Below, piece after piece: positions 17,552 to 29,020 of a stretch of DNA of 64,000 nt. The translations under genes and the position numbers were made by a program. The notes under the pieces were generated by a model, which had not been told where the DNA came from, did no database searches, and worked only from the letters and a program-made list of their open reading frames with translations. The stretch is taken from positions 62,001 to 126,000 of the IMG/VR virus record IMGVR_UViG_3300027985_000918; one strand, given 5' to 3'. Every line of letters begins with the position of its first letter. The stretch's first letter is position 1.

Positions 17552-18232
17552 TCAGCTCCCGCTGGTCGGCAGGGGTACCGTCCTCGTGGGGTCCCACACC
17601 GTCACGCCGAGCCATTCCGCCGCCTCGTACCAGGCTGCCAGCTCGGCGGGGTGAAGGTCGCCGTACAGGTACACGGTCACGTCGAGGTCGGAGACGTCTT
17701 GCAAGACGCTCATGCAGGCCTCCGCACACAAGGTGTGCGGCACGCCGTAGGCCCCCGTGCTGAGGGCAGGCACGGCCAGGCTCTTGCAGCCCAAGAGCTG
17801 GGCCATGGTGACTGCCCCGCTGTAGCACGAGTACAGGGCGTCGACCACGTCGTCCTCGTCCTCGGTGACGCTCTCTCCCACACGCAGCACTTCCTCCCGC
17901 AGAGGGCTCATGATGGGCCCCACGGTGTTGAGGACCCAGCCCACGCTGAGCCCCGTGCCGGTGGCCGGTACCGGGCGCACCTGGCCTTGGGGGCAGCGGA
18001 GGGTCACGTACCTTTCTGATAGGGGTCCCTCGGGCAGGTTGTGGCTGCTTTCCCGATAGGGGTGCCGCACGCCAATCACCTCTTCACACCGCTTCCGAAG
18101 GATTGCTCCAGCCTTGCGGTGGATGGCTCCGTCGACCCCTCCTCCCCCCAGCATCTGAGGGTTGGCGGCGTTCAGCAGAGCGTCCCCCTTGAACTCGGAA
18201 ATGTCCCCAAGGACGATGGTCATGGCACTCAT
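17552..18232 (-). CDS. macrodomain protein (ADP-ribose hydrolase, YmdB/MacroD-like)
   Basis: GDISEFKGDALLNAANPQMLGGGGVDGAIHRKAG, VLNTVGP, SLAVPALSTGAYG; motif at 18346-18372. Confidence 0.9.
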   Translation of the reverse strand: MSAMTIVLGDISEFKGDALLNAANPQMLGGGGVDGAIHRKAGAILRKRCEEVIGVRHPYRESSHNLPEGPLSERYVTLRCPQGQVRPVPATGTGLSVGWVLNTVGPIMSPLREEVLRVGESVTEDEDDVVDALYSCYSGAVTMAQLLGCKSLAVPALSTGAYGVPHTLCAEACMSVLQDVSDLDVTVYLYGDLHPAELAAWYEAAEWLGVTVWDPTRTVPLPTSGS

Positions 18233-18423: not shown

Positions 18424-19157
18424 AAGGGTGTCCGGCGTAGCAGGTTGAACGACGAAGGAGGACACAACGCCGGGGCACCAGCGGACTTAGGTAGCTTCTT
18501 GACACCTTGAGGGAGAGCACGCCAGGCCACTCAGGGAACCTTTTCCGACTTCTTCGGATCCTGAGTCAACCCGTCCGCCTTGGCTTCGGGGGACTGCGCT
18601 GCGGTGGTCCTCGGTTTCCCGAGATCCCCCTTGTGGGGGTCCCCACCGTCTCGACCCAGCTCCGGGAGCTACCCGTATGCCTCTTGTCGTCCGTCGGCTC
18701 CATGTACCCCTGCCTCCTGCCCTCTCAGGCAGAGGCTCCAGGGTGTAGGTTAAGATGGCTCAGAGGGGGCTTCAAAAGCCCACTCTGCCCCGCTTCAGAC
18801 TTCCCTTCTGCTTGCGGGGACCGTCCGGTCGTGGTCTATGCTAGGTTGTGGCTTGGCTGACGTCGCCCACCTCTACCCGTGGGGCTCTGTAGGGCTCTCC
18901 AGTTCACCGCTCGTCACGGATCCCTAGGACTGGTCCCGGGAGGGGTCAGCTCCCGTCCCCGGTTACTGGCCGGTGGACCTGGCTCTTTGGTTCAAGCCAC
19001 CCTACATTGTGTTCAGTCTTCCGGCTGCTCCTGGGGGTCTCAGCTTTCGCTCTCCCAGGCCCTGCTCTGCCTTCTTATGAAGGCAGTCCAGACAAGCCTG
19101 CCGTGCTCTCTCTCAAGCTGTCAAAGAGTGTGTCGGGGGTCTGTTCCCCTTCCACGC
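18387..19157 (-). ncRNA. candidate large structured ncRNA (~750 nt)
   Basis: Own motif at 19163-19189, terminator at 18387-18423, no credible ORF, 26/29-bp terminal pairing, internal hairpins. Confidence 0.6.
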
Positions 19158-19205
19158 TATAGCTACTCGAACCCGGGGGTGTTGTTACCACCCCACTAGC
19201 ACTTT

Positions 19206-19865
19206 TCAGCCGGCTTGGGAGGTCAATCGAAGCCGGTTGGGGGTCACCGCCTTGGCCCTCCAGTGCTTGTCCCCCACGGGAACGTGGTTGGCTCGGACGA
19301 ACTTGGCCACCTTGCGAGGGAACTCGGCGTACCGGAAGGACTCTGCCACCCGGACCACATAGCCCTCCTGCTCACCTCCGAGCCGGCTCACTCCCGAGAA
19401 ACACGCCTTCACGGCGTCTTCGTCCCAGGGGCCCTCGTACAGGGCTGGGGCGGTCTCCAGCCCCAGAAGGGCAGCCCACTCCATGGTCTCTTCCCAGGAC
19501 AGGCAGCGGTCCTCTTCGTCGTACATGGCGAACACGTAGAAGTAGCTGCCCAGAGCATCGTAGTGGATGCTGTGCTGGGCGAAGAGGTTCTCGCCGCAGA
19601 CCCGCCACCCCTTAGGGAGGTCGGGCGCTACGCTAGCTGCCAGCGCTCTTACCCAGTTCTGGCTCTCATGGGCCCGACCATCCACGGAACGGGCATGCAG
19701 GTACCCGTCTGGGTAGATGGTGGTGTTCTCTCCGTCCAGTTTCTCGGTCACCAGGACACGCTCGCCCTGGAAGTGTTCCACGTCCGAGAGGGTCTTGTCG
19801 TCGTCAGTAGCCCCAGGGGACCACGGAAGGTGGAACGTGCGGGGGTACTTGGTTCGAGGTTCCAT
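19206..19865 (-). CDS. ATP-dependent RNA ligase family protein
   Basis: KYPRTFHLPWSPG, VTEKLDGENTT (KxDG motif I), GENLFA, EGYVVR, KFVR; motif at 19899-19924. Confidence 0.9.
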   Translation of the reverse strand: MEPRTKYPRTFHLPWSPGATDDDKTLSDVEHFQGERVLVTEKLDGENTTIYPDGYLHARSVDGRAHESQNWVRALAASVAPDLPKGWRVCGENLFAQHSIHYDALGSYFYVFAMYDEEDRCLSWEETMEWAALLGLETAPALYEGPWDEDAVKACFSGVSRLGGEQEGYVVRVAESFRYAEFPRKVAKFVRANHVPVGDKHWRAKAVTPNRLRLTSQAG

Positions 19866-19939
19866 GACACACCTACCAGTTAGGATCGTTCCCCGCACCT
19901 ACTAATGACTCCCCTGCTGTTACCACCCGCCAAGTAGGA

Positions 19940-19965
19940 GGTAACCCCAGCCCCTTGGCGAGTAG
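19940..19965 (+). promoter_or_regulatory. phage promoter-like motif
   Basis: GGTAAC-N15-AGTAG, back to back with 19899-19924. Confidence 0.7.
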
Positions 19966-20057
19966 GGGGAGTCGATAGCAACGAGGACCCCCCCACACGG
20001 CGGGATCCGAACACCACATCTGCCAAGGAGAAGAAGCATGCTGAAGTGAACCCGCAA

Positions 20058-20094
20058 GCCGTCCCGGCCCCCTCCGTCTACAGGCCGGGACGGC
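20058..20094 (+). terminator. hairpin terminator
   Basis: GCCGTCCCGGCC-loop-GGCCGGGACGGC followed by CCTTTG. Confidence 0.6.
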
Positions 20095-20194
20095 CCTTTG
20101 GGCCGGGTAACCTCCGACGTCTGTAGGTGAGGAGTCGGGTCCAGCCGCCAGGCTACCCCCGTTGGGATGGCCTTCCCTGCTCCTTACGCTCCAC

Positions 20195-20773
20195 CTACTG
20201 GTCAGGGGACAGGCGGTTACCTCGAAAATTGGGGGTAACACCCCCACACATGGCCAGTAGCCACCCCGTAAGGACCACCCCACCCCCCACCCCCGGCGGA
20301 TGCCGCCCCTTGCACCCTACCTACTTGTCAAGAGGGGCCTTGTTACCTTGAAAACTGGGGGTAACACCCCCACACATGGCCAGTAGCTACCCCGTAAGGA
20401 CCACTCCGAAGGCGGGGAGGGGCGGCATCCGCCCCTTGCACCCTATCTACTTGTCAAGAGGGGCCTTGTTACCTCGAAAATTGGGGGTAACAACCCCGCC
20501 CCTGCCGAGTAGTCTAGGAGTAAGGGGCGCCCCATAGGGAAACCGATGCGCCGCCCCCCATCCTGCCCCTTGCATTCCCTCTACTTGTCAAGGGGCAGGT
20601 GGTTACCTCGAAAATTGGGGGTAACACCCCCACACATGGCCAGTAGATACCCCGTAAGGACCACCCACGAAGGACCATCTACCCCGCACCCACTCCCTAC
20701 GCCCTATCTACTGGTCAATGAACAGGCTGTTACCTCGAAGATAGAGGGTAACACGGGTACCTCCGGCGAGTAG
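20195..20773. repeat. five tandem ~126-bp units, each with a 66-bp symmetric double promoter-like core
   Basis: CTACT-N16-GTTACC-N12-GGTAAC-N16-AGTAG starting at 20195, 20321, 20447, 20581, 20708. Confidence 0.9.
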
Positions 20774-20913
20774 ACCAGACGTAAGGAGCGTTCACCCCTT
20801 CGACTGCTGAGAGCGGGGTAACTTCGACCGGCAGATGAGTAGGTGTTTCGTAAGGAGTGACCTTGTGCTTTTCCTATTGGGGAGGGAGGAACCCCCCTCC
20901 CTGAGGGCCCCAG

Positions 20914-21195
20914 CTACACCCAGAGCACGTCCCCCCACCCTACCTGGTCCGCAGGCACACCGAAGGTCTCCGTGGCCTCCTGGCGGGCGTCACGACCCGC
21001 CACGAAGTGCCCCAGCACATGCTCGTCCACCAGCACATCCCCAGGTACCGTGGTCAGGGCGAAACCCGTCAGCACGTCCCTCCCCATGAAGGGAGCGCCG
21101 TACTCAGGGACTACCAGACTCTCACCTCGCTTGTGGACAGGGCGGATGTACGCCCGGCGAGGGGCTGCGGCTCCGTCATCGAAGATGTCCATCAT
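20914..21195 (-). CDS. hypothetical protein
   Basis: 93 aa, AAGGAGG RBS, motif at 21218-21243. Confidence 0.75.
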   Translation of the reverse strand: MMDIFDDGAAAPRRAYIRPVHKRGESLVVPEYGAPFMGRDVLTGFALTTVPGDVLVDEHVLGHFVAGRDARQEATETFGVPADQVGWGDVLWV

Positions 21196-21244
21196 GTTCC
21201 TCCTTCAATCACCCCACCTACTCGCTACCTACCTCCTGTTACCT

Positions 21245-21610
21245 AACTTCGACCCCCACAACTCGAAACTTTGCCCTTCCGAAACTTTCAAGCCGAAACT
21301 TTCATCAAAGTTTCGGCAACTTGGCGGAAGTTTCGAGCTGGGGAGGTAACTAAGGCCTCTTGCCAAGTAGACACGGGGAACTTTGGAGAACCGCCACTAT
21401 GAAGGTCCCCAAGCCCGTTCCGGGATACCCGCTCACCTTGGAGTGCGGAGGCCCCCACCGATTCGAGTGGGGGCCTGGGGAAGCATGAACTTCGGCACCT
21501 AGAAGCCCTTTGAAAGTTTCAAAGGGCGCCCTAACGCCAAACTTTGAGTGTAGAAGTGCTCTTGAAAGTTTCGAGGACACTTCGGCACGCAAACTTTCGC
21601 AACTTTTCTG
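21245..21610. repeat. clusters of AAAGTTTC/GAAACTTT motifs
   Basis: Repeated in both orientations at 21245-21335 and 21490-21610. Confidence 0.75.
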
Positions 21611-21673
21611 CTTGACAGCGGGGAAGCCACCCCCCATGGTACGGGGGCTGCTACCAACCGACGGGGGGCGAAC

Positions 21674-22546
21674 ATGCAGCAGATGGACCAGTTGGCAAGG
21701 CTCCTCATTCTCGAAGGTACGGCGGCTGTGGAGCCGTACAGTTGGGTCAAGGGCTCCGCTCATGACCTGGAGTGTGCTCGCATCCGGCTGGAAGGGCAGC
21801 CCGACGATTCGTGGTTCTCCGAGAAGGACTCAGGGATGTATGCCCTGCTAATGGCCCGGGTGCAGCGGGAACTCAACCGCTCCCGCATCCTGCACGTCAC
21901 TGCCGAGGACATTCTCCAGCAGGCCATGAGTGGGCTCCTGTCGGACGGGAGCCTCGGGAAGCACCGCTTCCACGCCGTGGGAGTCATCGCCAGGGAGAAC
22001 ATTCTCCACGGTGTGGAGACCCCCGCCAGGTTGGCCTCGGGGACCCTCGGGTCCTGGCTCCACCGGATGGCCATCAACACCATCAAGAAGAAGGACGCTG
22101 CCTTCTCCCTCGATGCTATGGTGGATTCCCACCCCGACTGGGGCTTCGACTCCCTCACTCCCGTACAGGGAGAGAAGGACAACGTCGTGATCCTCGTCGA
22201 GTGCATGGCCGGGGACACCCCCCTGTCTGTCCAGCTCCGGGGGCTCATGTGGCTCGCCATCACCAAGCGCTTCCGGACCCAAGCCCAAGCGCTTGGACTC
22301 CGCATCATGACGGCCTGGTTCCAGGAGATCTGCAACGGAAGGCTGCTCACCCCAGGGCTCGACTGGGCCAAAAGAGCCGAGCTGCCCCTCACCACCGAGG
22401 AAGACAAGGTGAGGGCGAAGGTCCAGACCTGGCGGACGTGGGAGAAGGCGGCTCCCGTGATTCGAGAAGCCGTGCAGGGGGACCCCGATGTGGCGTCCTT
22501 CGTGGACCTCCGCCTCACCTACGAGGCTGAGGTCCACCGTCACTAG
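21674..22546 (+). CDS. sigma-70/ECF region-2-like protein (no clear region-4 HTH)
   Basis: AEDILQQAMSGLL...LGSWLHRMAINTIKKK matches ECF region 2 pattern. Confidence 0.5.
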   Translation: MQQMDQLARLLILEGTAAVEPYSWVKGSAHDLECARIRLEGQPDDSWFSEKDSGMYALLMARVQRELNRSRILHVTAEDILQQAMSGLLSDGSLGKHRFHAVGVIARENILHGVETPARLASGTLGSWLHRMAINTIKKKDAAFSLDAMVDSHPDWGFDSLTPVQGEKDNVVILVECMAGDTPLSVQLRGLMWLAITKRFRTQAQALGLRIMTAWFQEICNGRLLTPGLDWAKRAELPLTTEEDKVRAKVQTWRTWEKAAPVIREAVQGDPDVASFVDLRLTYEAEVHRH

Positions 22547-22570
22547 GGCCAACTGGTCGCCCACTGCAAG

Positions 22571-22688
22571 AAACTTCCAAAGTTTCGACTTGAAAGTTTC
22601 GGGGGAGCGAAGTTTCGACTTGTGAGGGTCGAAGTTTCGACTTGAAAGTTTCGGGGGAGCAAAGTTTCGACTTGTGAGGGTCGAAGTT
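22571..22688. repeat. tandem AAGTTTCG array
   Basis: About 8 copies, incl. duplicated ~44-bp block, abutting motif at 22690-22715. Confidence 0.85.
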
Positions 22689-22744
22689 AGGTAACAGAGG
22701 GGGAGTGGCGAGTAGGTCCTTCAGAACGGAAGGAGGACACCACA

Positions 22745-23020
22745 ATGAGCAGCACCATCATGGCCATCACGTGCGGACGCATGGGCTCTCGCATGGCAAA
22801 CGTCAAGAGGGGGAGAAGGACCCTGAGCTTCCCCATCTACAGCGTGAAGCTCTACGCCCTCCGGGAGAGGGCTGACGGAGTAAAGACCTGGCGTTTTGTC
22901 CGGCACCTGTCGGACGGGCACACCGTGTTCAGCACGGTGGAACGTCAAGCGGAACAAGAAGCCCTGCTGAAGGGGCTCAGCTTCGTTCCCAACCTCATCC
23001 ACGGGGCCAGGGCCTCATAG
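22745..23020 (+). CDS. hypothetical protein
   Basis: 91 aa, AAGGAGG RBS, motif at 22690-22715. Confidence 0.75.
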   Translation: MSSTIMAITCGRMGSRMANVKRGRRTLSFPIYSVKLYALRERADGVKTWRFVRHLSDGHTVFSTVERQAEQEALLKGLSFVPNLIHGARAS

Positions 23021-24136
23021 CTCCCCCTGCCACTGCCGGGCCTGTTCCCTCAGGTAGGTCAGGCCCCGGCTCACCGACGCTCTCGAAACCCCCAACTGCT
23101 CTGCGATCTCCGACCGAGTCATCCCAGCCGACACCATCGGGAGAATGGCTACCGCCATCTTCCCATCCTGCGTGTGGGACTTCTCCGACTCCCCCAGCCA
23201 CACCGTCAACGCCTCTTGGGCCTCCGCCATACCCTGGGCTTCCTCTGCCCCTGAGGGCTCCGCAGGGATGGTCTGACTGGAGGCCACGTCCATCAACCCA
23301 TAATCCCCGTCACCCCCATACCCCATCACCCCAGGGGACTCGAACTCCTTCCGGCGCTTCTGCTTCCGGTGGTAGTTGCTCAGGACCCCCTGACACACCA
23401 TGTGGACGTAGTGCCCGAAGGAGGACTTGCGGGCATCCCAAGGGCAGTGACCCTCATTCCGGGCCAGCAGACCTTTGTAGACCTCTTGGAGCACATCATC
23501 CGGGTCGTAACGGGCGGAGAAGATCCACTGCCCGAACCCAGCGAACAGCAACTTGGCGACCTCCTCCGCCCTGTTCACCAGATCGATCCCTAGCTCCGGG
23601 TTGTCGTCCAGTACCCCCTCGGCTACCACCAAGGCGGCCTGAGCGGCGTTCACCGATTCGGGGATCACGGTAACCAGAGCCTGCTCGCCAGTAGGCTCCA
23701 CGTAAGCCCCGCCCCTCTTACGGGGGGACTCCGTACCACGAGGGGTAACGCTGGCCGACTTCCGAGTAGCTGGGGTGTTGGGAGTCTGAGCCACACCGAA
23801 CTCGATCATGAGGTCGAGTCCAGGCTCACCCTTCGAGGCTGCCGGAGCGTGGCGGCCAATGCGGAAGTACCGCTCGAAGGTCCAATGACGATCGTGCCCG
23901 GTCAGGGCTAGGAGGAGCTGCCTCTTGGACGTGTAGACGACATGATCCCCCTCGGGAAGCACCAACACCAGGTGCTGGGGTGACCTAACCACCACCTCGT
24001 GGCTTCCGTCCATGTGACGGGCCCGAAGGCGAAGGGTCTCGCTGCTGTCAAGCGAGATCGACGCCGGGGTTCGCTTTTCTTCGGCGGAGGGTTCGATGTC
24101 AGTCTGGGGGCGGGTTTGATTTTTCGAGGGTTGCAA
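23015..24136 (-). CDS. ECF-like RNA polymerase sigma factor with N-terminal extension
   Basis: YDPDDVLQEVYKGLL...FGHYVHMVCQGVLSNYHRKQKRR (region 2), MTRSEIAEQLGVSRASVSRGLTYLRE (region 4 HTH); TTG 24136 follows GGAGGGAGG. Confidence 0.8.
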   Translation of the reverse strand: MQPSKNQTRPQTDIEPSAEEKRTPASISLDSSETLRLRARHMDGSHEVVVRSPQHLVLVLPEGDHVVYTSKRQLLLALTGHDRHWTFERYFRIGRHAPAASKGEPGLDLMIEFGVAQTPNTPATRKSASVTPRGTESPRKRGGAYVEPTGEQALVTVIPESVNAAQAALVVAEGVLDDNPELGIDLVNRAEEVAKLLFAGFGQWIFSARYDPDDVLQEVYKGLLARNEGHCPWDARKSSFGHYVHMVCQGVLSNYHRKQKRRKEFESPGVMGYGGDGDYGLMDVASSQTIPAEPSGAEEAQGMAEAQEALTVWLGESEKSHTQDGKMAVAILPMVSAGMTRSEIAEQLGVSRASVSRGLTYLREQARQWQGEL

Positions 24137-24189
24137 GTTACGTCCTCCCTCCGTACATCGGGATGTGCCGGAAGTTTCATCGTCCCGCA

Positions 24190-24218
24190 CTTCTACCACT
24201 TTCAGCCCCCAAGTGCAA
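24190..24218 (-). promoter_or_regulatory. possible host sigma70-type promoter of the sigma gene
   Basis: TTGCAC-N17-TAGAAG on minus strand. Confidence 0.4.
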
Positions 24219-24493
24219 GGAAACAGTAGGGCATCCCGCCCCCAAACGGGCGGGTCAACCCCCCTTCATAGCCCTAAAGTTCTGCAGGGGGAGTTTGGCT
24301 AAGGCCAGAACCGAAACTTTGGGGTGAACTTCGATGGTCTCAAAGTTTGCTGTGGGCTTCCCTGCCCCCTCGGAGAGGGGTGCCCTTCCCTCTCCAACCC
24401 CCCTTATCGAAGCAGCCCTCCAACTGGCTGTTGGCCCCCTTCAAGAGTGAGGAGTCAGCCGGCCGACCGAGTCCCGCCGTGTTGAAGAATCCA

Positions 24494-24519
24494 GGTAACC
24501 CGGACTCTCTTATGAGTAG
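24494..24519 (+). promoter_or_regulatory. phage promoter-like motif heading the paralog array
   Basis: GGTAAC-N15-AGTAG. Confidence 0.75.
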
Positions 24520-24564
24520 GCCTTTCAGGACGAAACCTCTTGTAAGTCCCAGAGGAGGCAACCC

Positions 24565-24950
24565 ATGAACACGAGTTAAGAACGGCATCGTGAGGCATTG
24601 AGAGGATGGGCCTGCTGTCGAGTGGTACCTCAACGGGAATCGGCATGAGTGAGGCGCCCCAGCCATTGAGGGGCCTAAACGGACTCAATGGCTGGGGCTG
24701 TGGGACGGACTCAATGGCTGGGGCTGTGGGATCGATCCCACACCGAGGTGATTCGGGAGGCAGCCATGAACATCTGGTAGGTCCAACACCAAAGGTTATA
24801 AAATCCCTGCTGGGCCGTTCGGGCCGTTGAAGGTGGTGGTTCTGAGGCCAGCTCCACCGTGAAGGCCCCCGGTTACGAGGGTGCCGACAGCTTCAAAGCG
24901 TGGTGGTCCCCTGGGGTCTGCACCCGAATCGAGGAGAAATCTGGCCGATG
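24565..24950 (+). pseudogene. decayed HREDGPA-repeat gene remnant(s)
   Basis: Fragments equivalent to EDGPAVEW, IDPTPEVIREAA, QLHREG, CTRIEE with stops/frameshifts; 26-bp tandem duplication 24679-24730. Confidence 0.75.
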
Positions 24951-25577
24951 ATCACCGTACCGACCTTGAAAACCCTCAATGCCTGCTCGGACCAGGTGAC
25001 TCTTTTCGAGTCCTTTTTGGGGGATCGAGAAGGTGTTGATCCCACGCCGGATGTGATCCGGGAAGCAGCCCTGTCCGGCCTAGATGTGAAGTGGGCTCAG
25101 GCTCGGGGGTTGCTCACGATCCCCGACGGGAAGATCACGTACAAAGACAGCCGCAAAGAGTGGTACCTCGATGGGAACCTCCATCGGGAGGATGGCCCCG
25201 CTGTTGAGGGGGCCGACGGAACCCAGGAGTGGTGGCTCAACGGGCAGCTCCATCGGAAGGATGGGCCTGCTGTCGTGCGGTCCGACGGCCGCAGGTTGTG
25301 GTGGCTCTACTGGAAACTCCACCGAGAGGATGGGCCTGCTGTCGAGGGGGCCGATGGTCACCAAGAGTGGTGGGTCAACGGGAAACGCCACCGGGAGGAT
25401 GGGCCGGCGATCGAGTGGGCCAAAGGCTACAAAGAGTGGTACCGCAACGGGAAGCGGCACCGAGAGGACGGACCTGCGATCGAGTGGCCCGACGGCTCCA
25501 AGGAGTGGTACCACAACGGGAAATTCCACCGAGAGGATGGCCCTGCTTTCGAGGGGCCCGACGTCACCCGGTCGTAG
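24948..25577 (+). CDS. HREDGPA-repeat protein 1 (6 repeats, premature stop)
   Basis: N-domain + repeats; TAG TGA where paralogs have TGG TGG. Confidence 0.85.
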   Translation: MITVPTLKTLNACSDQVTLFESFLGDREGVDPTPDVIREAALSGLDVKWAQARGLLTIPDGKITYKDSRKEWYLDGNLHREDGPAVEGADGTQEWWLNGQLHRKDGPAVVRSDGRRLWWLYWKLHREDGPAVEGADGHQEWWVNGKRHREDGPAIEWAKGYKEWYRNGKRHREDGPAIEWPDGSKEWYHNGKFHREDGPAFEGPDVTRS

Positions 25578-25621
25578 TGAACCCACGGAGTCCACATCCA
25601 AACTGAGGAGGAATCTGGCCG

Positions 25622-26226
25622 ATGATCACTATCGAAAAGCTGGAGAAGCTGGGGGTTAGCCCTTACCAGATGGATCTGTTCCTGAAGTTCCTGGGGGTCG
25701 AGAGGGGGTCGAACCTACGCCCGAGGTAGTGCGAGAAGTTGCCCTACTCGGGTTGGATGTTGAGTGGGCCCAGTCTCAGGGTCTGCTACGGATCCCGGAC
25801 GGTATGCTCATCTACAAGGACGGCAGGCGGGAGTGGTGGGTCAATGGGCAGCTCCACCGAGAGGATGGGCCTGCGATCGAGCAGCCCGATGGCACCAAGG
25901 AGTGGTTCTTCCACGGTCAACGCCACCGAGAAGGTGGGCCTGCGGTCGAGGGGGCTGACGGCACCAAGGAGTGGTATCTCCACGGGGAAAGGCACCGTGA
26001 GGATGGCCCCGCTTACGAGGGAACCGATGGTCACCAAGAGTGGTGGGTCAACGGGGAACGCCACCGAGAGGATGGGCCTGCGATCGAGTGGACCGATGGC
26101 CGTCAAGGATGGTATTGCAACGGCCGTAGACACCGTGAGGATGGTCCGGCGGTTGAGTGGGCCGACGGCACCCTAGAGTGGTGGATCCACGGGGCCCGCA
26201 TCCGAATCAAGAGGGGTTACGAATGA
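25622..26226 (+). pseudogene. HREDGPA-repeat protein 2 (5 repeats), frameshift in G-run
   Basis: G5 at 25693-25697, G6 would restore frame. Confidence 0.8.
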
Positions 26227-27035
26227 TCACTGTCGAAAAGCTGGAGAACCTGGGGGTTAGCCCTTACCAGAGGGCTCTGTTCCTGGAGTTTCTCGGGGGT
26301 CGGGAGGGGGTCGAGCCCACGCCGGAGATGATCCGAGAAGCTGCTCTGCTTGGACTGGATGTGGCTTGGGCTCAGGGACTGGGGCTGCTGCAGATCCCCG
26401 ACGGGATGCTCCTCTACAAGGACGGCCTACGGGTGTGGTACCTCGACGGTCAGATCCACCGAGAGGATGGGCCTGCGATCGAGAGATCCAACGGCACCCG
26501 GGAGTGGTGGGTCCGAGGGAAGCTCCACCGAGAGAGCGGACCTGCGATCGAGATGGCCGATGGTCACAAAGAGTGGTTCTTCCACGGTCAACGCCACCGA
26601 GAAGGTGGGCCTGCTTTCGAGATGGCCTCTGGCACCAAGGAGTGGTGGTTCCACGGCCAACGCCACCGTGAGGATGGTCCTGCTTTCGAGTGGGCCGACG
26701 GCTACAAGGCGTGGTGGGTCCACGGGGAACGCCACCGTGAGGATGGTCCGGCAGTCGAGTACGCCAACGGCACCAAGGAGTGGTGGATCCAGGGGCAGCG
26801 TCACCGAGAGGATGGCCCCGCCATGGAGTACGCCAACGGCCACAAGGAGTGGTGGATCCACGGTCGGAGGCACCGTGAGGATGGGCCTGCTATCGTGCGG
26901 GCCAACGGCCGCAAGGAGTGGTACATCCACGGCCGTAGACACCGAGAGGATGGCCCCGCCATGGAGTGGGCCGACGGCTACAAGGAGTGGTGGATCCACG
27001 GGGTCCTCACTCGAACTGAGGAGGGTCCCGAATGA
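26223..27035 (+). CDS. HREDGPA-repeat protein 3 (8 repeats)
   Basis: N-domain + repeats, ATGA overlap. Confidence 0.9.
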   Translation: MITVEKLENLGVSPYQRALFLEFLGGREGVEPTPEMIREAALLGLDVAWAQGLGLLQIPDGMLLYKDGLRVWYLDGQIHREDGPAIERSNGTREWWVRGKLHRESGPAIEMADGHKEWFFHGQRHREGGPAFEMASGTKEWWFHGQRHREDGPAFEWADGYKAWWVHGERHREDGPAVEYANGTKEWWIQGQRHREDGPAMEYANGHKEWWIHGRRHREDGPAIVRANGRKEWYIHGRRHREDGPAMEWADGYKEWWIHGVLTRTEEGPE

Positions 27036-27691
27036 TCACGATCGAAACTCTCCGGAAGTTGAGGGCTTGCCGGTCTCAGGTGGACCTTTTCCGGGAGTTC
27101 TTGGGTGACCGGGAGGGTGTCGAGCCCACGGATGAGATGATCCGGGAAGCTGCCCAGTATGGGCTGGATGTGGCTTGGGCTCAGGGTCAGAATCTTCTGC
27201 GGATCCCGGATGGGATGCTCCTCTACGAGGACGGCAGTCGGGAGTGGTGGTTCAATGGCCAGCTCCACCGTGAGGATGGTCCTGCGATCGAGTGGTCCAC
27301 CGGCACTCTGGAGTGGTTCTTCCACGGCCAGCGACATCGTGAAGAGGGGCCTGCGATCGAGTGGTCCACCGGCACTCTGGAGTGGTTCTTCCACGGTCAA
27401 CTTCACCGAGAGGGTGGCCCCGCCATGGAGTGGCCAGACGGCCACAAGGAGTGGTGGGTCAACGGCCAACTTCACCGAGAGGATGGGCCTGCTTATGAGT
27501 GGTCCGACGGCCACAAGGCGTGGTGGGTCCATGGGTTGCGGCACCGAGAGGATGGGCCTGCTTACGAGGGGGCCGATGGCACCAAGGAGTGGTGGGTCCA
27601 TGGGTTGCGGCACCGAGAGGATGGGCCTGCGGTCGAGTGGGCCAACGGAACCAGGGAGTGGTGGATCCACGGGGTTCGCACCCCGAACTGA
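27032..27691 (+). CDS. HREDGPA-repeat protein 4 (6 repeats)
   Basis: N-domain + repeats; tail shifted at C-run 27681-27684. Confidence 0.9.
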   Translation: MITIETLRKLRACRSQVDLFREFLGDREGVEPTDEMIREAAQYGLDVAWAQGQNLLRIPDGMLLYEDGSREWWFNGQLHREDGPAIEWSTGTLEWFFHGQRHREEGPAIEWSTGTLEWFFHGQLHREGGPAMEWPDGHKEWWVNGQLHREDGPAYEWSDGHKAWWVHGLRHREDGPAYEGADGTKEWWVHGLRHREDGPAVEWANGTREWWIHGVRTPN

Positions 27692-27704
27692 GGGGATGAT
27701 CCCA

Positions 27705-28382
27705 ATGATCACGATCGAAACTCTCCGGAAGCGAGAGGCTTGCCAGAATCAGGTGACCCTTTTTGAGTCCTTTCTTGGAGGCCGGGAGGGGGTCGAACCC
27801 ACACCTGAGGTGATCCGAGAGGCAGCCTTGTTTGGGCTGAACGTCCGGTGGGCCCAGGAGCAGGGTTTGCTCACAATCCCCGACGGACAAATCAAATTCA
27901 AATACGGCACCAAGGAGTGGTGGCTCAACGGCCGGTGGCACCGTGAAGACGGGCCTGCTTTCGAGGGATCCTGCGGTCACAAGGAATGGTGGACCCACGG
28001 CCAGAGGCACCGTGAGGATGGGCCTGCGGTGGAGCTGGCCGATGCCCGTCGGGAATGGTGGGTCCACGGAACGAAGCACCGGGATGGCGGGCCCGCTGTC
28101 GAGTGGGCCGACGGGTCCAAAGAATGGTGGGTCGACAGCCAACTCCACCGAGAGGATGGTCCGGCTGTTGAGCGGACCAACGGGTCCAAAGAATGGTGGG
28201 TCAACGGTCAGCTCCATCGAGAGGACGGGCCTGCCATTGAGTACGCCGACGGCACCCGGGAGTGGTACCTCAACGGGGAAAGGCATCGAGAGGGGGGGGC
28301 GGCGATCGAAGCAGCCGACGGCACTCGGGAGTGGTGGGTTCAGGGGGTCCGCATCCGAACTGAGGGGAGGATGGGGAGATGA
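27705..28382 (+). CDS. HREDGPA-repeat protein 5 (6 repeats)
   Basis: ATG 27705 MITIETLRKREAC. Confidence 0.9.
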   Translation: MITIETLRKREACQNQVTLFESFLGGREGVEPTPEVIREAALFGLNVRWAQEQGLLTIPDGQIKFKYGTKEWWLNGRWHREDGPAFEGSCGHKEWWTHGQRHREDGPAVELADARREWWVHGTKHRDGGPAVEWADGSKEWWVDSQLHREDGPAVERTNGSKEWWVNGQLHREDGPAIEYADGTREWYLNGERHREGGAAIEAADGTREWWVQGVRIRTEGRMGR

Positions 28383-29020
28383 TCACGATCGAGATGCTAG
28401 AGAACCTGGGGGCTTGCCAGGACCAGGTGGACCTTTTCCAAGAGTTCCTTGGTGTCCGAGATGGAATCGAGCCTACGCCCGAGGTGGTTCGGGAGGCAGC
28501 CCTGTATGGGTTGGATGTCGAGTGGATCCAGTCTCTGGGTTTGCTGCAGATCCCCGACGGGATGCTCCTCTACAAGGACGGCTCTAAGGAGTGGTATCTC
28601 GATGGAAAGCTCCACCGAGAGGGCGGGCCTGCGATCGAGTGGCCCGATGGCACTCTTGAGTGGTGGGTCCACGGGGTGAACCACCGTGTGGAAGGGCCTG
28701 CGGTCGAGAGGGCCAACGGAACCCTGGAGTGGTGGCTCAATGGTCTCAGGCACCGTGAAGGGGGCCCTGCGATTGAGTATTCCCACGGCACCAGGGAATG
28801 GTGGTTTAACGGCCAGCTCCATCGGGAGGATGGGCCTGCGATTGAGAGGGCCTCCGGCACCAGAGTTTGGTACCTCGACGGGTTGCGGCACCGAGGGGAT
28901 GGGCCGGCTTACGAGTGGCCCGACGGCACCAGGGAGTGGTGGACCCACGGGCAGTACATCCGAACTGAGGGGGACTCCCCAGTCCTCAGTCTGCTGCAGA
29001 TCCTGTACGGGGGGAGTTAA
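28379..29020 (+). CDS. HREDGPA-repeat protein 6 (5 repeats)
   Basis: N-domain + repeats; tail DSPVLSLLQILYGGS. Confidence 0.9.
   Translation: MITIEMLENLGACQDQVDLFQEFLGVRDGIEPTPEVVREAALYGLDVEWIQSLGLLQIPDGMLLYKDGSKEWYLDGKLHREGGPAIEWPDGTLEWWVHGVNHRVEGPAVERANGTLEWWLNGLRHREGGPAIEYSHGTREWWFNGQLHREDGPAIERASGTRVWYLDGLRHRGDGPAYEWPDGTREWWTHGQYIRTEGDSPVLSLLQILYGGS

What the first reader, a model, noticed from the sequence alone, without database searches (positions are those of the whole stretch)
21612..24218. Two convergent sigma-like genes, each behind a host-type promoter: candidate transcription cascade
Seen: 23015-24136 has ECF-like region 2 and region-4 HTH plus a long N-terminal extension; 21674-22546 has a region-2-like segment but no obvious HTH. 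Upstream are TTGCAC-N17-TAGAAG (24190-24218, minus) and TTGACA-N17-CATGGT (21612-21640, plus). Inference: host sigma70 makes the phage sigma(s), which then fire the GGTAAC/AGTAG promoters; the region-2-only protein may be a split partner, core-binding competitor or anti-host factor.
Basis: partly seen in the sequence, partly recalled or inferred. Interest (0 to 1): 0.7.

Follow-up and report, generated by a model that had tools for sequence, protein, structure and literature searches.

The report
Phage sigma-factor pair with early promoters
A 402-kb phage with no detectable RNA polymerase of its own carries two convergent sigma-like genes behind conserved host-style promoters, an ordinary kind of phage takeover circuit with some unusual details.

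Summary
ORF A (23015-24136, minus) is an ECF-type sigma factor, with sigma-2 and sigma-4 domains and a family-specific N-terminal domain. ORF B (21674-22546, plus) matches no Pfam, PHROG or NCBIfam model. Profile comparison, fold comparison and a modelled complex with the RNA polymerase beta-prime clamp helices (0.77, best control 0.01) mark it as a very divergent sigma-like protein.

Both promoter strings sit at the stated coordinates. They are weak against the consensus but are conserved, with identical 17-nt spacing, in relatives: five genomes for A and two for B.

GGTAAC-N15/16-RGTAG is a real promoter class: 37 copies in the window against 0.07 expected, and 85 in the genome. No phage RNA polymerase was found.

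A's sigma-4 recognition helix is identical in exactly the five phages that share this motif. A is therefore the likeliest reader of it.

- All five relatives have a GGTAAC-class promoter embedded antisense in A's linker, which suggests self-limiting shut-off.
- Phased AAASTTT boxes cluster at the sigma loci.
- A motif-type promoter lies 303 nt upstream of B.

This is a known kind of system, close to phiEco32 and 7-11. The assignment of each sigma to a promoter class is inference.

The parts
23015..24136 (-). ORF A, 373 aa: ECF-type sigma factor with a family-specific N-terminal domain
   Evidence: TIGR02937 at E 1.4e-10. PF07638 sits at its cut-off. The top Foldseek and VIA hits are ECF sigma factors. 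The family has more than 597 members, on contigs up to 619 kb.
23837..24049 (-). A residues 30-100: conserved N-terminal domain of unknown function
   Evidence: It is conserved across 32 family members and modelled with pLDDT 86-95. No structural or feature match was found.
23342..23581 (-). A residues 186-265: sigma domain 2 (regions 2.1-2.4)
   Evidence: VIA matches to sigma-2 domains of SigE, SigR, SigC and sigma-70 at Z 6.3-6.9. It is 84-89% identical among close relatives.
23039..23128 (-). A residues 337-366: sigma-4 helix-turn-helix, the -35 reader
   Evidence: Helix-turn-helix Pfam hits. Sigma-4 matches at Z up to 7.8. The recognition helix is identical in the 5 phages that share the GGTAAC motif.
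24190..24218 (-). P_A: TTGCAC-N17-TAGAAG preceded by TG, a sigma-70-style extended -10 promoter
   Evidence: TTG, then TGnTAnAA, are invariant at 17-nt spacing in 5 relatives.
23744..23769 (+). GGTAAC-N15-AGTAG promoter, antisense inside A's linker
   Evidence: An antisense site is present in A's linker in all 5 relatives. In L015 the motif is encoded in a different reading frame.
23669..23694 (+). Second antisense GGTAAC-N15-AGTAG promoter inside A
21674..22546 (+). ORF B, 290 aa: very divergent sigma-like protein (alternative start at 21683)
   Evidence: No library hit. The exhaustive search found 232 cluster representatives. hhalign to A's region 2.1-2.2. VIA sigma-4 and sigma-2 hits. Modelled complex with beta-prime.
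21884..21949 (+). B residues 71-92: region-2.2-like helix predicted to contact the beta-prime clamp helices
   Evidence: Interface list. Aligned to A's region 2.2.
22214..22507 (+). B residues 181-278: sigma-4-like helical domain, poorly conserved
   Evidence: The top 5 VIA hits are sigma region 4 at Z 5.1-5.6. It is 22-36% identical to the L014 ortholog.
21612..21640 (+). P_B: TTGACA-N17-CATGGT, a sigma-70-style promoter
   Evidence: Conserved as TTGACA-N17-CATTGT upstream of the B ortholog in L014. The TTGACA promoter class is exclusively intergenic.
21506..21597 (.). Four AAASTTT boxes at exact 26-bp spacing, including a 21-nt perfect palindrome at 21506-21526, upstream of P_B
   Evidence: Boxes are also present upstream of B in L014.
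21345..21370 (+). GGTAAC-N15-AGTAG promoter 303 nt upstream of B, with no predicted terminator between them
22580..22688 (.). 52-bp tandem repeat (2.1 copies) rich in AAAGTTT boxes
22690..22715 (+). GGTAAC-N15-AGTAG promoter that drives the small ORF and points into the 3' end of A
   Evidence: Relatives L012, L014 and L016 have convergent promoters in the equivalent place.
22745..23020 (+). Small ORF of 91 aa between B and A; it overlaps A's stop by 6 nt
   Evidence: It has no family and is not conserved in relatives.
24314..24348 (.). Two AAASTTT boxes upstream of P_A
   Evidence: Boxes are conserved in relatives upstream and downstream of P_A.
21218..21313 (.). Minus-strand GGTAAC promoter (21218-21243) plus four AAASTTT boxes (21266-21313)

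Best explanation
This locus is the entry point of a sigma-factor cascade in a jumbo phage that has no detectable RNA polymerase of its own.

1. Early in infection, the host holoenzyme most likely starts at two conserved sigma-70-style promoters. P_A is TTGCAC-N17-TG-TAGAAG. P_B is TTGACA-N17-CATGGT. This step is inferred from conservation.
2. P_A yields ORF A, an ECF-type sigma factor. It has sigma-2 and sigma-4 domains and an N-terminal domain of unknown role. This is shown by sequence and fold.
3. A binds host core polymerase and most likely reads the 85 GGTAAC-N15/16-RGTAG promoters that precede many phage genes. This is inferred from the ECF-like shape of the motif and from A's recognition helix being conserved together with the motif.
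4. Three promoters of that same class fire against A: one convergent at 22690 and two embedded in its linker. Switching the class on should therefore shut A off by antisense or colliding transcription. This is inferred; the arrangement is conserved in five genomes.
5. P_B, and possibly read-through from the motif promoter at 21345, yields ORF B. B is a very divergent sigma-like protein. It is predicted to grip the beta-prime clamp helices with a region-2.2-like helix. It most likely acts as a second initiation factor, or as a competitor of the host sigma, at a later step.
6. The phased AAASTTT boxes are probably operators for an unidentified regulator of these loci.
For: A is a sigma factor.
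- TIGR02937 matches at E 1.4e-10, and PF07638 sits at its cut-off.
- The top Foldseek hits are SigH, SigE and SigL, with probability 0.9-0.99.
- Nearly all of the top 50 VIA hits are sigma factor domains, at Z up to 7.8.

No phage polymerase. Searches for PF00562, PF00623 and PF00940 found nothing.

Early promoters.
- P_A is conserved in 5 relatives with identical spacing.
- P_B is conserved in L014, where the B ortholog is 42% identical at the protein level.
- The same convergent layout of A, a small ORF and B occurs in L014.
- All 7 sites of TTGAC[AT]-N16-18-TAnnnT are intergenic.

The GGTAAC promoter class.
- The window has 37 sites against 0.07 expected.
- The genome has 85 sites, of which 80 are intergenic. 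Most lie 22-70 nt before a start codon.

Link between A and the motif.
- The motif occurs only in the relatives whose A is at least 60% identical.
- Those five share an identical recognition helix.
- B's sigma-4-like half is only 22-36% identical between two phages that have the same motif.

Antisense promoters. They are present in A's linker in 5 of 5 genomes. In L015 the motif is kept even though it is read in a different frame.

B is sigma-like.
- hhalign gives probability 80% and E 1.4e-5.
- The top five VIA hits are sigma region 4, and the N-terminal half matches ECF sigma-2 domains.
- Atlas structure rows 1, 4 and 9 are ECF sigma clusters.
- The modelled complex with E. coli beta-prime 230-340 scored 0.77, against a best control of 0.01. 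That mark was reached by 58 of 80 solved complexes and by 2 of 110 mismatched pairs. The three runs agree in at least 43% of contacts, and the partner's pLDDT is at least 71. The interface joins beta-prime 262-298 to B 71-92.

Co-occurrence. B-family genes are present in three near-complete or complete jumbo genomes that have a full-length A homolog.
Against: - No transcription data exist. Only DNA runs from a hydrothermal vent metagenome hold this sequence.
- The host is unknown, so calling a promoter host-type rests on its resemblance to the general sigma-70 consensus.
- P_A's -10 element lacks the usual final T in all five relatives, and P_B's -10 matches only 3 of 6 positions. Neither passes a consensus scan.
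- The genome encodes at least three further sigma-like proteins: A-prime, B-prime and C. Any of them could read the GGTAAC class.
- The co-conservation of A's helix with the motif rests on one closely related clade.
- B's fold matches (Z 4.5-5.6) are in the range that the tool calls common for helical proteins. Foldseek finds nothing for B in PDB or BFVD.
- The modelled complex could score high simply from likeness to solved sigma complexes, and it used E. coli beta-prime rather than the real host's.
- A and B are adjacent only in 2 of the 4 close relatives with enough flank to judge, and they lie far apart in distant relatives.
Confidence: 0.6

Rival explanations
1. A different phage sigma reads the GGTAAC class: B, B-prime, A-prime or C. 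A would then serve another promoter set, for example the CCTATAG-type sites upstream of tail and baseplate genes.
For: The genome has five sigma-like genes. A third motif, CCTATA[GA], is intergenic at 16 of 20 sites and precedes baseplate-like genes. No experiment links A to any motif.
Against: A is the most canonical ECF sigma, and the motif has an ECF-like -35 element ending in AAC. A's recognition helix is identical in exactly the phages that have the motif. B's sigma-4-like half diverges between phages that share the motif.
Confidence: 0.2
2. B is not an initiation factor. It is a sigma mimic that occupies the beta-prime clamp helices to displace or block the host primary sigma. That would make it an anti-host factor, not a promoter reader.
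For: The predicted interface is confined to the region-2.2-like helix and the N-terminal helix. The sigma-4-like half evolves fast and its helix-turn-helix is interrupted. No library model recognises B as a sigma.
Against: The region 2.3-2.4-like segment, with its conserved aromatic residue and asparagine, is among B's best conserved parts at 65-74% identity. That would be unnecessary for a pure blocker. A second paralog, B-prime, sits beside another sigma-like gene.
Confidence: 0.25
3. The sigma-70-like strings are not used by the host holoenzyme. The loci would instead be driven through the AAASTTT boxes by an unidentified activator or by another sigma.
For: The -10 elements are poor. AAASTTT boxes cluster at every sigma-like locus and are conserved in relatives. 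The boxes also sit upstream of GGTAAC promoters at 21345, 22690 and genome position 183180.
Against: The -35 and -10 hexamers, rather than the spacer, are the invariant columns, at fixed 17-nt spacing. The TTGACA-N17-TAnnnT class is exclusively intergenic across the genome.
Confidence: 0.15
4. B is an unrelated helical protein and its sigma likeness is coincidental.
For: Foldseek gives E above 0.2 in both PDB and BFVD. The VIA scores are below 8. No family model matches.
Against: Independent lines converge in the correct domain order. The modelled complex places exactly the region-2.2-like helix on the known sigma-binding site of beta-prime, and controls scored at most 0.01.
Confidence: 0.12

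Closest known systems
Sigma factors of phiEco32-like phages: phiEco32 gp36 and Salmonella phage 7-11 gp47 (PMC12276001, PMC8948821)
   Same: In these phages a phage-encoded sigma binds host core polymerase. Early genes use host sigma-70 promoters, and later genes use phage-specific promoters. The 7-11 promoters are bipartite, GTAAtg-N16-aCTA, which is close in shape to GGTAAC-N15/16-AGTAG. The gp36 chain (9m7y_F) appears among the structural matches of both A and B.
   Different: Those phages are small podoviruses with one sigma. Here a 402-kb genome carries at least five sigma-like genes. A has an extra conserved N-terminal domain and antisense promoters of the phage class inside its own gene. 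No gp79-like partner was sought.
Bacterial ECF (group 4) sigma factors such as SigE, SigH, SigL, SigW and SigX
   Same: A has the two-domain sigma-2 plus sigma-4 architecture and matches TIGR02937 and PF07638. The candidate -35 element ends in AAC, as in ECF promoters; that comparison rests on my own knowledge.
   Different: A scores just under the curated cut-offs. It carries a 180-residue N-terminal extension. No anti-sigma gene was recognised next to it, and the small neighbouring ORF is not conserved. It is not autoregulated by a sense promoter of its own class.
Sigma factors of jumbo phages that lack a polymerase (group 2 jumbo phages; PMC7824862)
   Same: These jumbo phages have no RNA polymerase of their own. 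They encode sigma factors that are thought to recruit the host catalytic subunits.
   Different: That survey describes a minimal single-HTH type and an RpoD-like type. It does not describe A's ECF-like type with an N-terminal domain, or the B family.
T4 gp55 and the SPO1 gp28 / gp33-gp34 cascades (from my own knowledge, not tested here)
   Same: These are very divergent phage sigma-like proteins. They bind the beta-prime clamp helices and switch host polymerase to later phage promoter classes.
   Different: No sequence or fold comparison of B with gp55, gp28 or gp34 was made. B keeps a sigma-4-like domain, which gp55 lacks.

Membership tests
Sigma-70 family, group 4 (ECF): ORF A | Sigma domain 2 (regions 2.1-2.4) recognisable by family models | tested here: met
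   TIGR02937 at E 1.4e-10, covering profile positions 19-163 of 165. PF07638 at 20.8-21.9 bits. VIA sigma-2 matches at Z 6.3-6.9.
Sigma-70 family, group 4 (ECF): ORF A | Score above the curated family cut-off | tested here: inconclusive
   41.0 bits against 42.9 for TIGR02937. For PF07638, 20.8 bits on the protein and 21.9 on the six-frame match, against a cut-off of 21.1.
Sigma-70 family, group 4 (ECF): ORF A | Sigma domain 4 with a helix-turn-helix that reads the -35 element | tested here: met
   Helix-turn-helix models hit residues 337-366. Sigma-4 structural matches at Z 7.5-7.8.
Sigma-70 family, group 4 (ECF): ORF A | No region 1.1 and no sigma-3 domain | tested here: met
   In the model, sigma-2 (186-265) joins sigma-4 (from about residue 300) through a short linker. 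Whole-chain alignments are to ECF sigmas. The N-terminal domain matches nothing.
Sigma-70 family, group 4 (ECF): ORF A | Binds core polymerase and directs initiation at a cognate bipartite promoter | not testable with these tools
   A candidate motif exists and is conserved together with A's recognition helix.
Sigma-70 superfamily: ORF B | Match to a sigma family sequence model | tested here: not met
   No Pfam, PHROG or NCBIfam hit for B or for 43 family members.
Sigma-70 superfamily: ORF B | Region 2.1-2.2 core-binding segment | tested here: inconclusive
   hhalign to the A family gives probability 80% and E 1.4e-5 over 37 columns.
Sigma-70 superfamily: ORF B | Sigma-2 and sigma-4 folds in the correct order | tested here: inconclusive
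   The top 5 VIA hits are sigma-4 (Z 5.1-5.6), and the N-terminal half matches ECF sigma-2 (Z 4.5-4.8). These scores are in the tool's grey zone. Foldseek is negative. The Atlas rows are ECF clusters with TM below 0.5 by the query, although row 4 reaches 0.63 by the target.
Sigma-70 superfamily: ORF B | Docks on the beta-prime clamp helices | tested here: met
   In silico only. The score was 0.77 against a best control of 0.01. The mark was reached by 58 of 80 solved complexes and 2 of 110 mismatched pairs. Runs agree in at least 43% of contacts, and partner pLDDT is at least 71. The interface joins beta-prime 262-298 to B 71-92.
Sigma-70 superfamily: ORF B | Promoter-specific initiation | not testable with these tools
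No promoter class could be assigned to B.
Phage sigma cascade of the phiEco32 / 7-11 type | Phage sigma gene expressed from a host sigma-70 promoter | tested here: inconclusive
   Conserved TTG-N17-TGnTAnAA upstream of A, and TTGACA-N17-CATKGT upstream of B. The -10 elements are weak, and there are no expression data.
Phage sigma cascade of the phiEco32 / 7-11 type | A distinct phage-specific promoter consensus upstream of later genes | tested here: met
   85 sites, 80 of them intergenic, mostly 22-70 nt before start codons.
Phage sigma cascade of the phiEco32 / 7-11 type | Reliance on host core polymerase | tested here: met
   No beta, beta-prime or single-subunit polymerase family was found. 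Two caveats apply: very divergent polymerases could be missed, and the PF00940 control rang nowhere.

The most novel reading that the evidence does not exclude
B and its roughly 230 cluster relatives may be an unrecognised class of sigma-2-centred initiation factors of jumbo phages. Their distinctive features are their own N-terminal beta-prime-contacting helix, a conserved insertion of about 30 residues carrying a G-x-E-T-P motif, and a fast-evolving sigma-4 remnant. They would drive a late promoter class. Separately, the ECF-type sigma A may be a self-limiting pulse generator, because promoters of the class it activates are embedded antisense in its own coding sequence and held there by selection on the DNA rather than on the protein.
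Probability: 0.3. Interest if true: 0.75.

Novelty: new variant of a known kind. Interest (0 to 1): 0.55.

Why it matters
Phage sigma cascades are textbook biology. For the large uncultured jumbo phages found in metagenomes, however, almost nothing is known about how they are transcribed.

This locus gives a testable wiring diagram for one such clade. It has conserved early promoters, an 85-copy phage promoter with a likely cognate sigma, and a conserved antisense shut-off feature. It also has a second, unannotated sigma-like family that is predicted to bind RNA polymerase.

If confirmed, the B family would extend the known sequence range of sigma-like factors. The A sigma with its promoter would be a compact orthogonal transcription pair. 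The embedded antisense promoters would be a clear example of regulatory DNA maintained inside a coding linker.

Tried and rejected
- blastn of 21000-25000 against the phage collection gave no match.
- The word-based protein search for B found only B itself. The exhaustive profile search was needed.
- The search for related loci with the B alignment failed, because it has no conserved 7-10-column stretch.
- The records behind L012 and L013 are not held, so they could not be searched whole.
- Foldseek of the B model against PDB and BFVD found nothing significant.
- The profile search of PDB sequences with the B family gave only spurious helical hits.
- Rfam found no RNA family in 18500-25000.
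- No RNA sequencing runs hold this sequence, so transcription starts could not be read.
- I considered whether the small ORF between B and A is an anti-sigma. It has no family and no conservation among relatives, so the idea is unsupported.
- I considered whether A drives itself from a sense promoter of its own class. A weight-matrix scan found none on the minus strand upstream of A.
- K-mer searches for the promoter type of distant relatives were dominated by codon bias and gave nothing usable.
- An Atlas search for A's N-terminal domain gave no lead.
- A-prime shows no BLASTP similarity to A.
- The repeat proteins at 24948-29020 looked MORN-like to me, but Pfam gave only weak DUF6745 hits.
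Full report
**Setting.** The window is bases 62001-126000 of a single 402,383-bp viral contig. The contig has 60% G+C and direct terminal repeats, and its CheckV completeness estimate is 76%. It was assembled from a hydrothermal vent metagenome. Only DNA runs hold it. Nothing in the phage collection resembles it at the DNA level.

**The two genes.** ORF A occupies 23015-24136 on the minus strand and encodes 373 aa. Its TTG start follows a GGAGG ribosome site. The start matches the JGI gene call and is conserved in relatives. ORF B occupies 21674-22546 on the plus strand and encodes 290 aa; JGI starts it at 21683. The genes are convergent. A 91-aa ORF at 22745-23020 lies between them and overlaps A's stop codon.

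**ORF A is an ECF-type sigma factor.**
- TIGR02937 matches residues 203-368 at E 1.4e-10. The score is 41 bits against a cut-off of 42.9.
- PF07638 sits at its cut-off.
- An AlphaFold model built on 32 homologs has mean pLDDT 77.
- Its best Foldseek PDB matches are SigH, SigE and SigL.
- Nearly all of the top 50 VIA matches are sigma-2, sigma-4 or whole ECF sigma chains, at Z up to 7.8.
- Ahead of the sigma core lies a confidently folded domain at residues 30-100. It is conserved across the family but matched nothing. A disordered, variable linker follows it.
- The family is large, with at least 597 hits. It occurs on viral contigs up to 619 kb.

**ORF B is a very divergent sigma-like protein.** No Pfam, PHROG or NCBIfam model matches B or any of 43 relatives. 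An exhaustive profile search found 232 cluster representatives. One is a paralog, B-prime, elsewhere in this genome at 32% identity. Four independent lines point to sigma ancestry:
- A profile-profile comparison aligns B 54-93 with A's region 2.1-2.2, at probability 80% and E 1.4e-5.
- In a Foldseek-independent search of the B model (pLDDT 89.6), the top five hits are all sigma region 4. The N-terminal half matches ECF sigma-2 domains. The Z scores of 4.5-5.6 are in the tool's grey zone.
- Three of the ten nearest Atlas structure rows are ECF sigma clusters.
- A modelled complex of B with E. coli beta-prime 230-340 scored 0.77, against a best control of 0.01. That mark was reached by 58 of 80 solved complexes and by 2 of 110 mismatched pairs. 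The runs agree in at least 43% of contacts, and partner pLDDT is at least 71. The interface joins beta-prime 262-298 to B 71-92. From my own knowledge of sigma-core structures, beta-prime 262-298 is the clamp helix pair that binds region 2.2 of every sigma.

Foldseek alone finds nothing for B. The case is therefore good but not closed.

**The two host-type promoters.** They are weak against the E. coli consensus, and a consensus scan of 19000-27000 finds none. Phylogenetic footprinting changes the picture.
- Upstream of A, five genomes were compared: the window, L012, L014, L015 and L016. Their A proteins are 60-71% identical to the window's. The invariant columns are TTG of the -35 element and TGnTAnAA of an extended -10 element, always 17 nt apart.
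- Upstream of B, the ortholog in L014 is 42% identical at the protein level. It keeps TTGACA-N17-CATTGT, followed by the same CGGGG.
- L014 also keeps the convergent layout of A, a small ORF and B.
- Genome-wide, all 7 sites of TTGAC[AT]-N16-18-TAnnnT are intergenic, although only 9% of the genome is intergenic by my gene calls.
- A third sigma-like gene, A-prime, has TTGACT-N16-TG-TATGGT upstream of it.
- One caveat: A's -10 element lacks the usual final T in all five genomes.

**The phage promoter class.** GGTAAC-N15/16-AGTAG occurs 56 times in the genome, always with a 15 or 16 nt spacer. A sister form with GGTA[GT] as the -10 element occurs 29 times, and all 29 are intergenic. Of the 85 sites in total, 80 are intergenic, and most lie 22-70 nt before a start codon. 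In the window there are 37 matches against 0.07 expected. No beta, beta-prime or T7-type polymerase was detected. Host core polymerase must therefore be redirected.

**Which sigma reads it?**
- The motif is present only in the four relatives whose A is at least 60% identical. It is absent around more distant A homologs.
- In exactly those five genomes, A's sigma-4 recognition helix is identical over 14 residues. Overall identity among them is only 60-71%, and the helix differs in the distant homologs.
- B's sigma-4-like half is only 22-36% identical between the window and L014, although both share the motif.
- The motif's shape resembles the GTAAtg-N16-aCTA promoters read by the sigma of phage 7-11 (PMC8948821).

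I therefore assign the class to A. This is an inference, at about 60% confidence.

- No promoter of the phage class lies upstream of A in the sense direction. Two lie inside A in antisense, at 23669 and 23744. A third, at 22690, converges on A's 3' end.
- Every one of the five related genomes has an antisense GGTAAC-N15-AGTAG in A's variable linker.
- In the window the GTTACC box is read as Val-Thr. In L015 it is read in another frame as Gly-Tyr-Pro. The DNA, not the peptide, is therefore what is conserved. This suggests that switching on the class shuts A off.
- B has a promoter of the phage class 303 nt upstream, at 21345. No predicted terminator lies between them.
- AAASTTT boxes are strongly clustered. 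Of the window's 15 copies, 14 lie in 21266-24348, against 2.2 expected for the whole window. Four of them sit upstream of P_B at exact 26-bp spacing, and one forms a 21-nt perfect palindrome. Elsewhere in the genome they cluster at the other sigma-like loci. They are conserved in relatives. They look like operators for an unidentified regulator.

**Wider context.**
- The genome also encodes A-prime (507 aa, weak sigma match), arranged divergently from B-prime.
- It encodes protein C, which has two sigma-4 repeats and sits next to a NusG-like gene.
- B-family genes are present in three near-complete or complete jumbo genomes that carry a full-length A homolog, but they are not adjacent to it there.
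- A third motif, CCTATA[GA], is intergenic at 16 of 20 sites. It lies in the 169-359 kb region and precedes several baseplate-like genes. It may be a late promoter class.

**Comparison with known systems.** The system works like the sigma switches of phiEco32 and phage 7-11 (PMC12276001, PMC8948821). It also fits the general picture of polymerase-less jumbo phages that encode sigma factors (PMC7824862). From my own knowledge, it resembles the SPO1 and T4 cascades. It differs in four ways:
- the number of sigma-like genes;
- A's extra N-terminal domain;
- the embedded antisense promoters;
- the B family, which no library recognises.

**Verdict.** The cascade interpretation is partly supported. 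The kind of system is known, but this variant has new features worth testing.

Noticed in passing
window 19899-20842: Units of about 126 bp repeat in tandem (TRF: 20216-20666, 3.5 copies). Each unit carries two back-to-back divergent GGTAAC-N16-AGTAG promoters. There is no ORF and no Rfam match. It could be a small-RNA factory or a sink for the phage sigma.
   Followed up: partly
window 24948-29020: A cluster of paralogous genes encodes proteins built of ~23-residue repeats with an HREDGPA core. Pfam gives only weak DUF6745 hits. The cluster is served by GGTAAC promoters at 24494 and 29119.
   Followed up: partly
window 19206-19865 (minus) and 17552-18232 (minus): An RNA ligase gene (PF09414, E 1.6e-33) and a Macro-domain gene lie next to the sigma locus. 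The Macro gene is also near the A homolog in relative L012.
   Followed up: no
genome 393171-396115 (L003, L006), outside the window: A second sigma-like pair is arranged divergently. B-prime has 396 aa and is 32% identical to B. A-prime has 507 aa and carries an acidic coiled-coil N-terminal half. A-prime has TTGACT-N16-TG-TATGGT upstream of it.
   Followed up: partly
genome about 364.5-365.8 kb (L005), outside the window: A 238-aa protein has two sigma-4 repeats (PF08281, 39.8 bits). It sits directly next to a NusG/KOW homolog, with AAAGTTT boxes nearby.
   Followed up: no
genome 169-359 kb, outside the window: CCTATA[GA] is intergenic at 16 of 20 sites. It lies 20-100 nt upstream of large genes, three of which hit baseplate or tail PHROGs. 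It may be a late promoter class.
   Followed up: partly
window 29119 and 39306; genome 55853: Near-identical promoter-plus-leader cassettes recur upstream of different genes. Each consists of a GGTAAC promoter followed by the same leader of about 30 nt ending in a GGAG ribosome site.
   Followed up: no
G008:C1:61534-63477 (relative, 436 kb): Two B-family copies lie in tandem inside one 722-aa open frame. This would be a fused double sigma-like protein.
   Followed up: no
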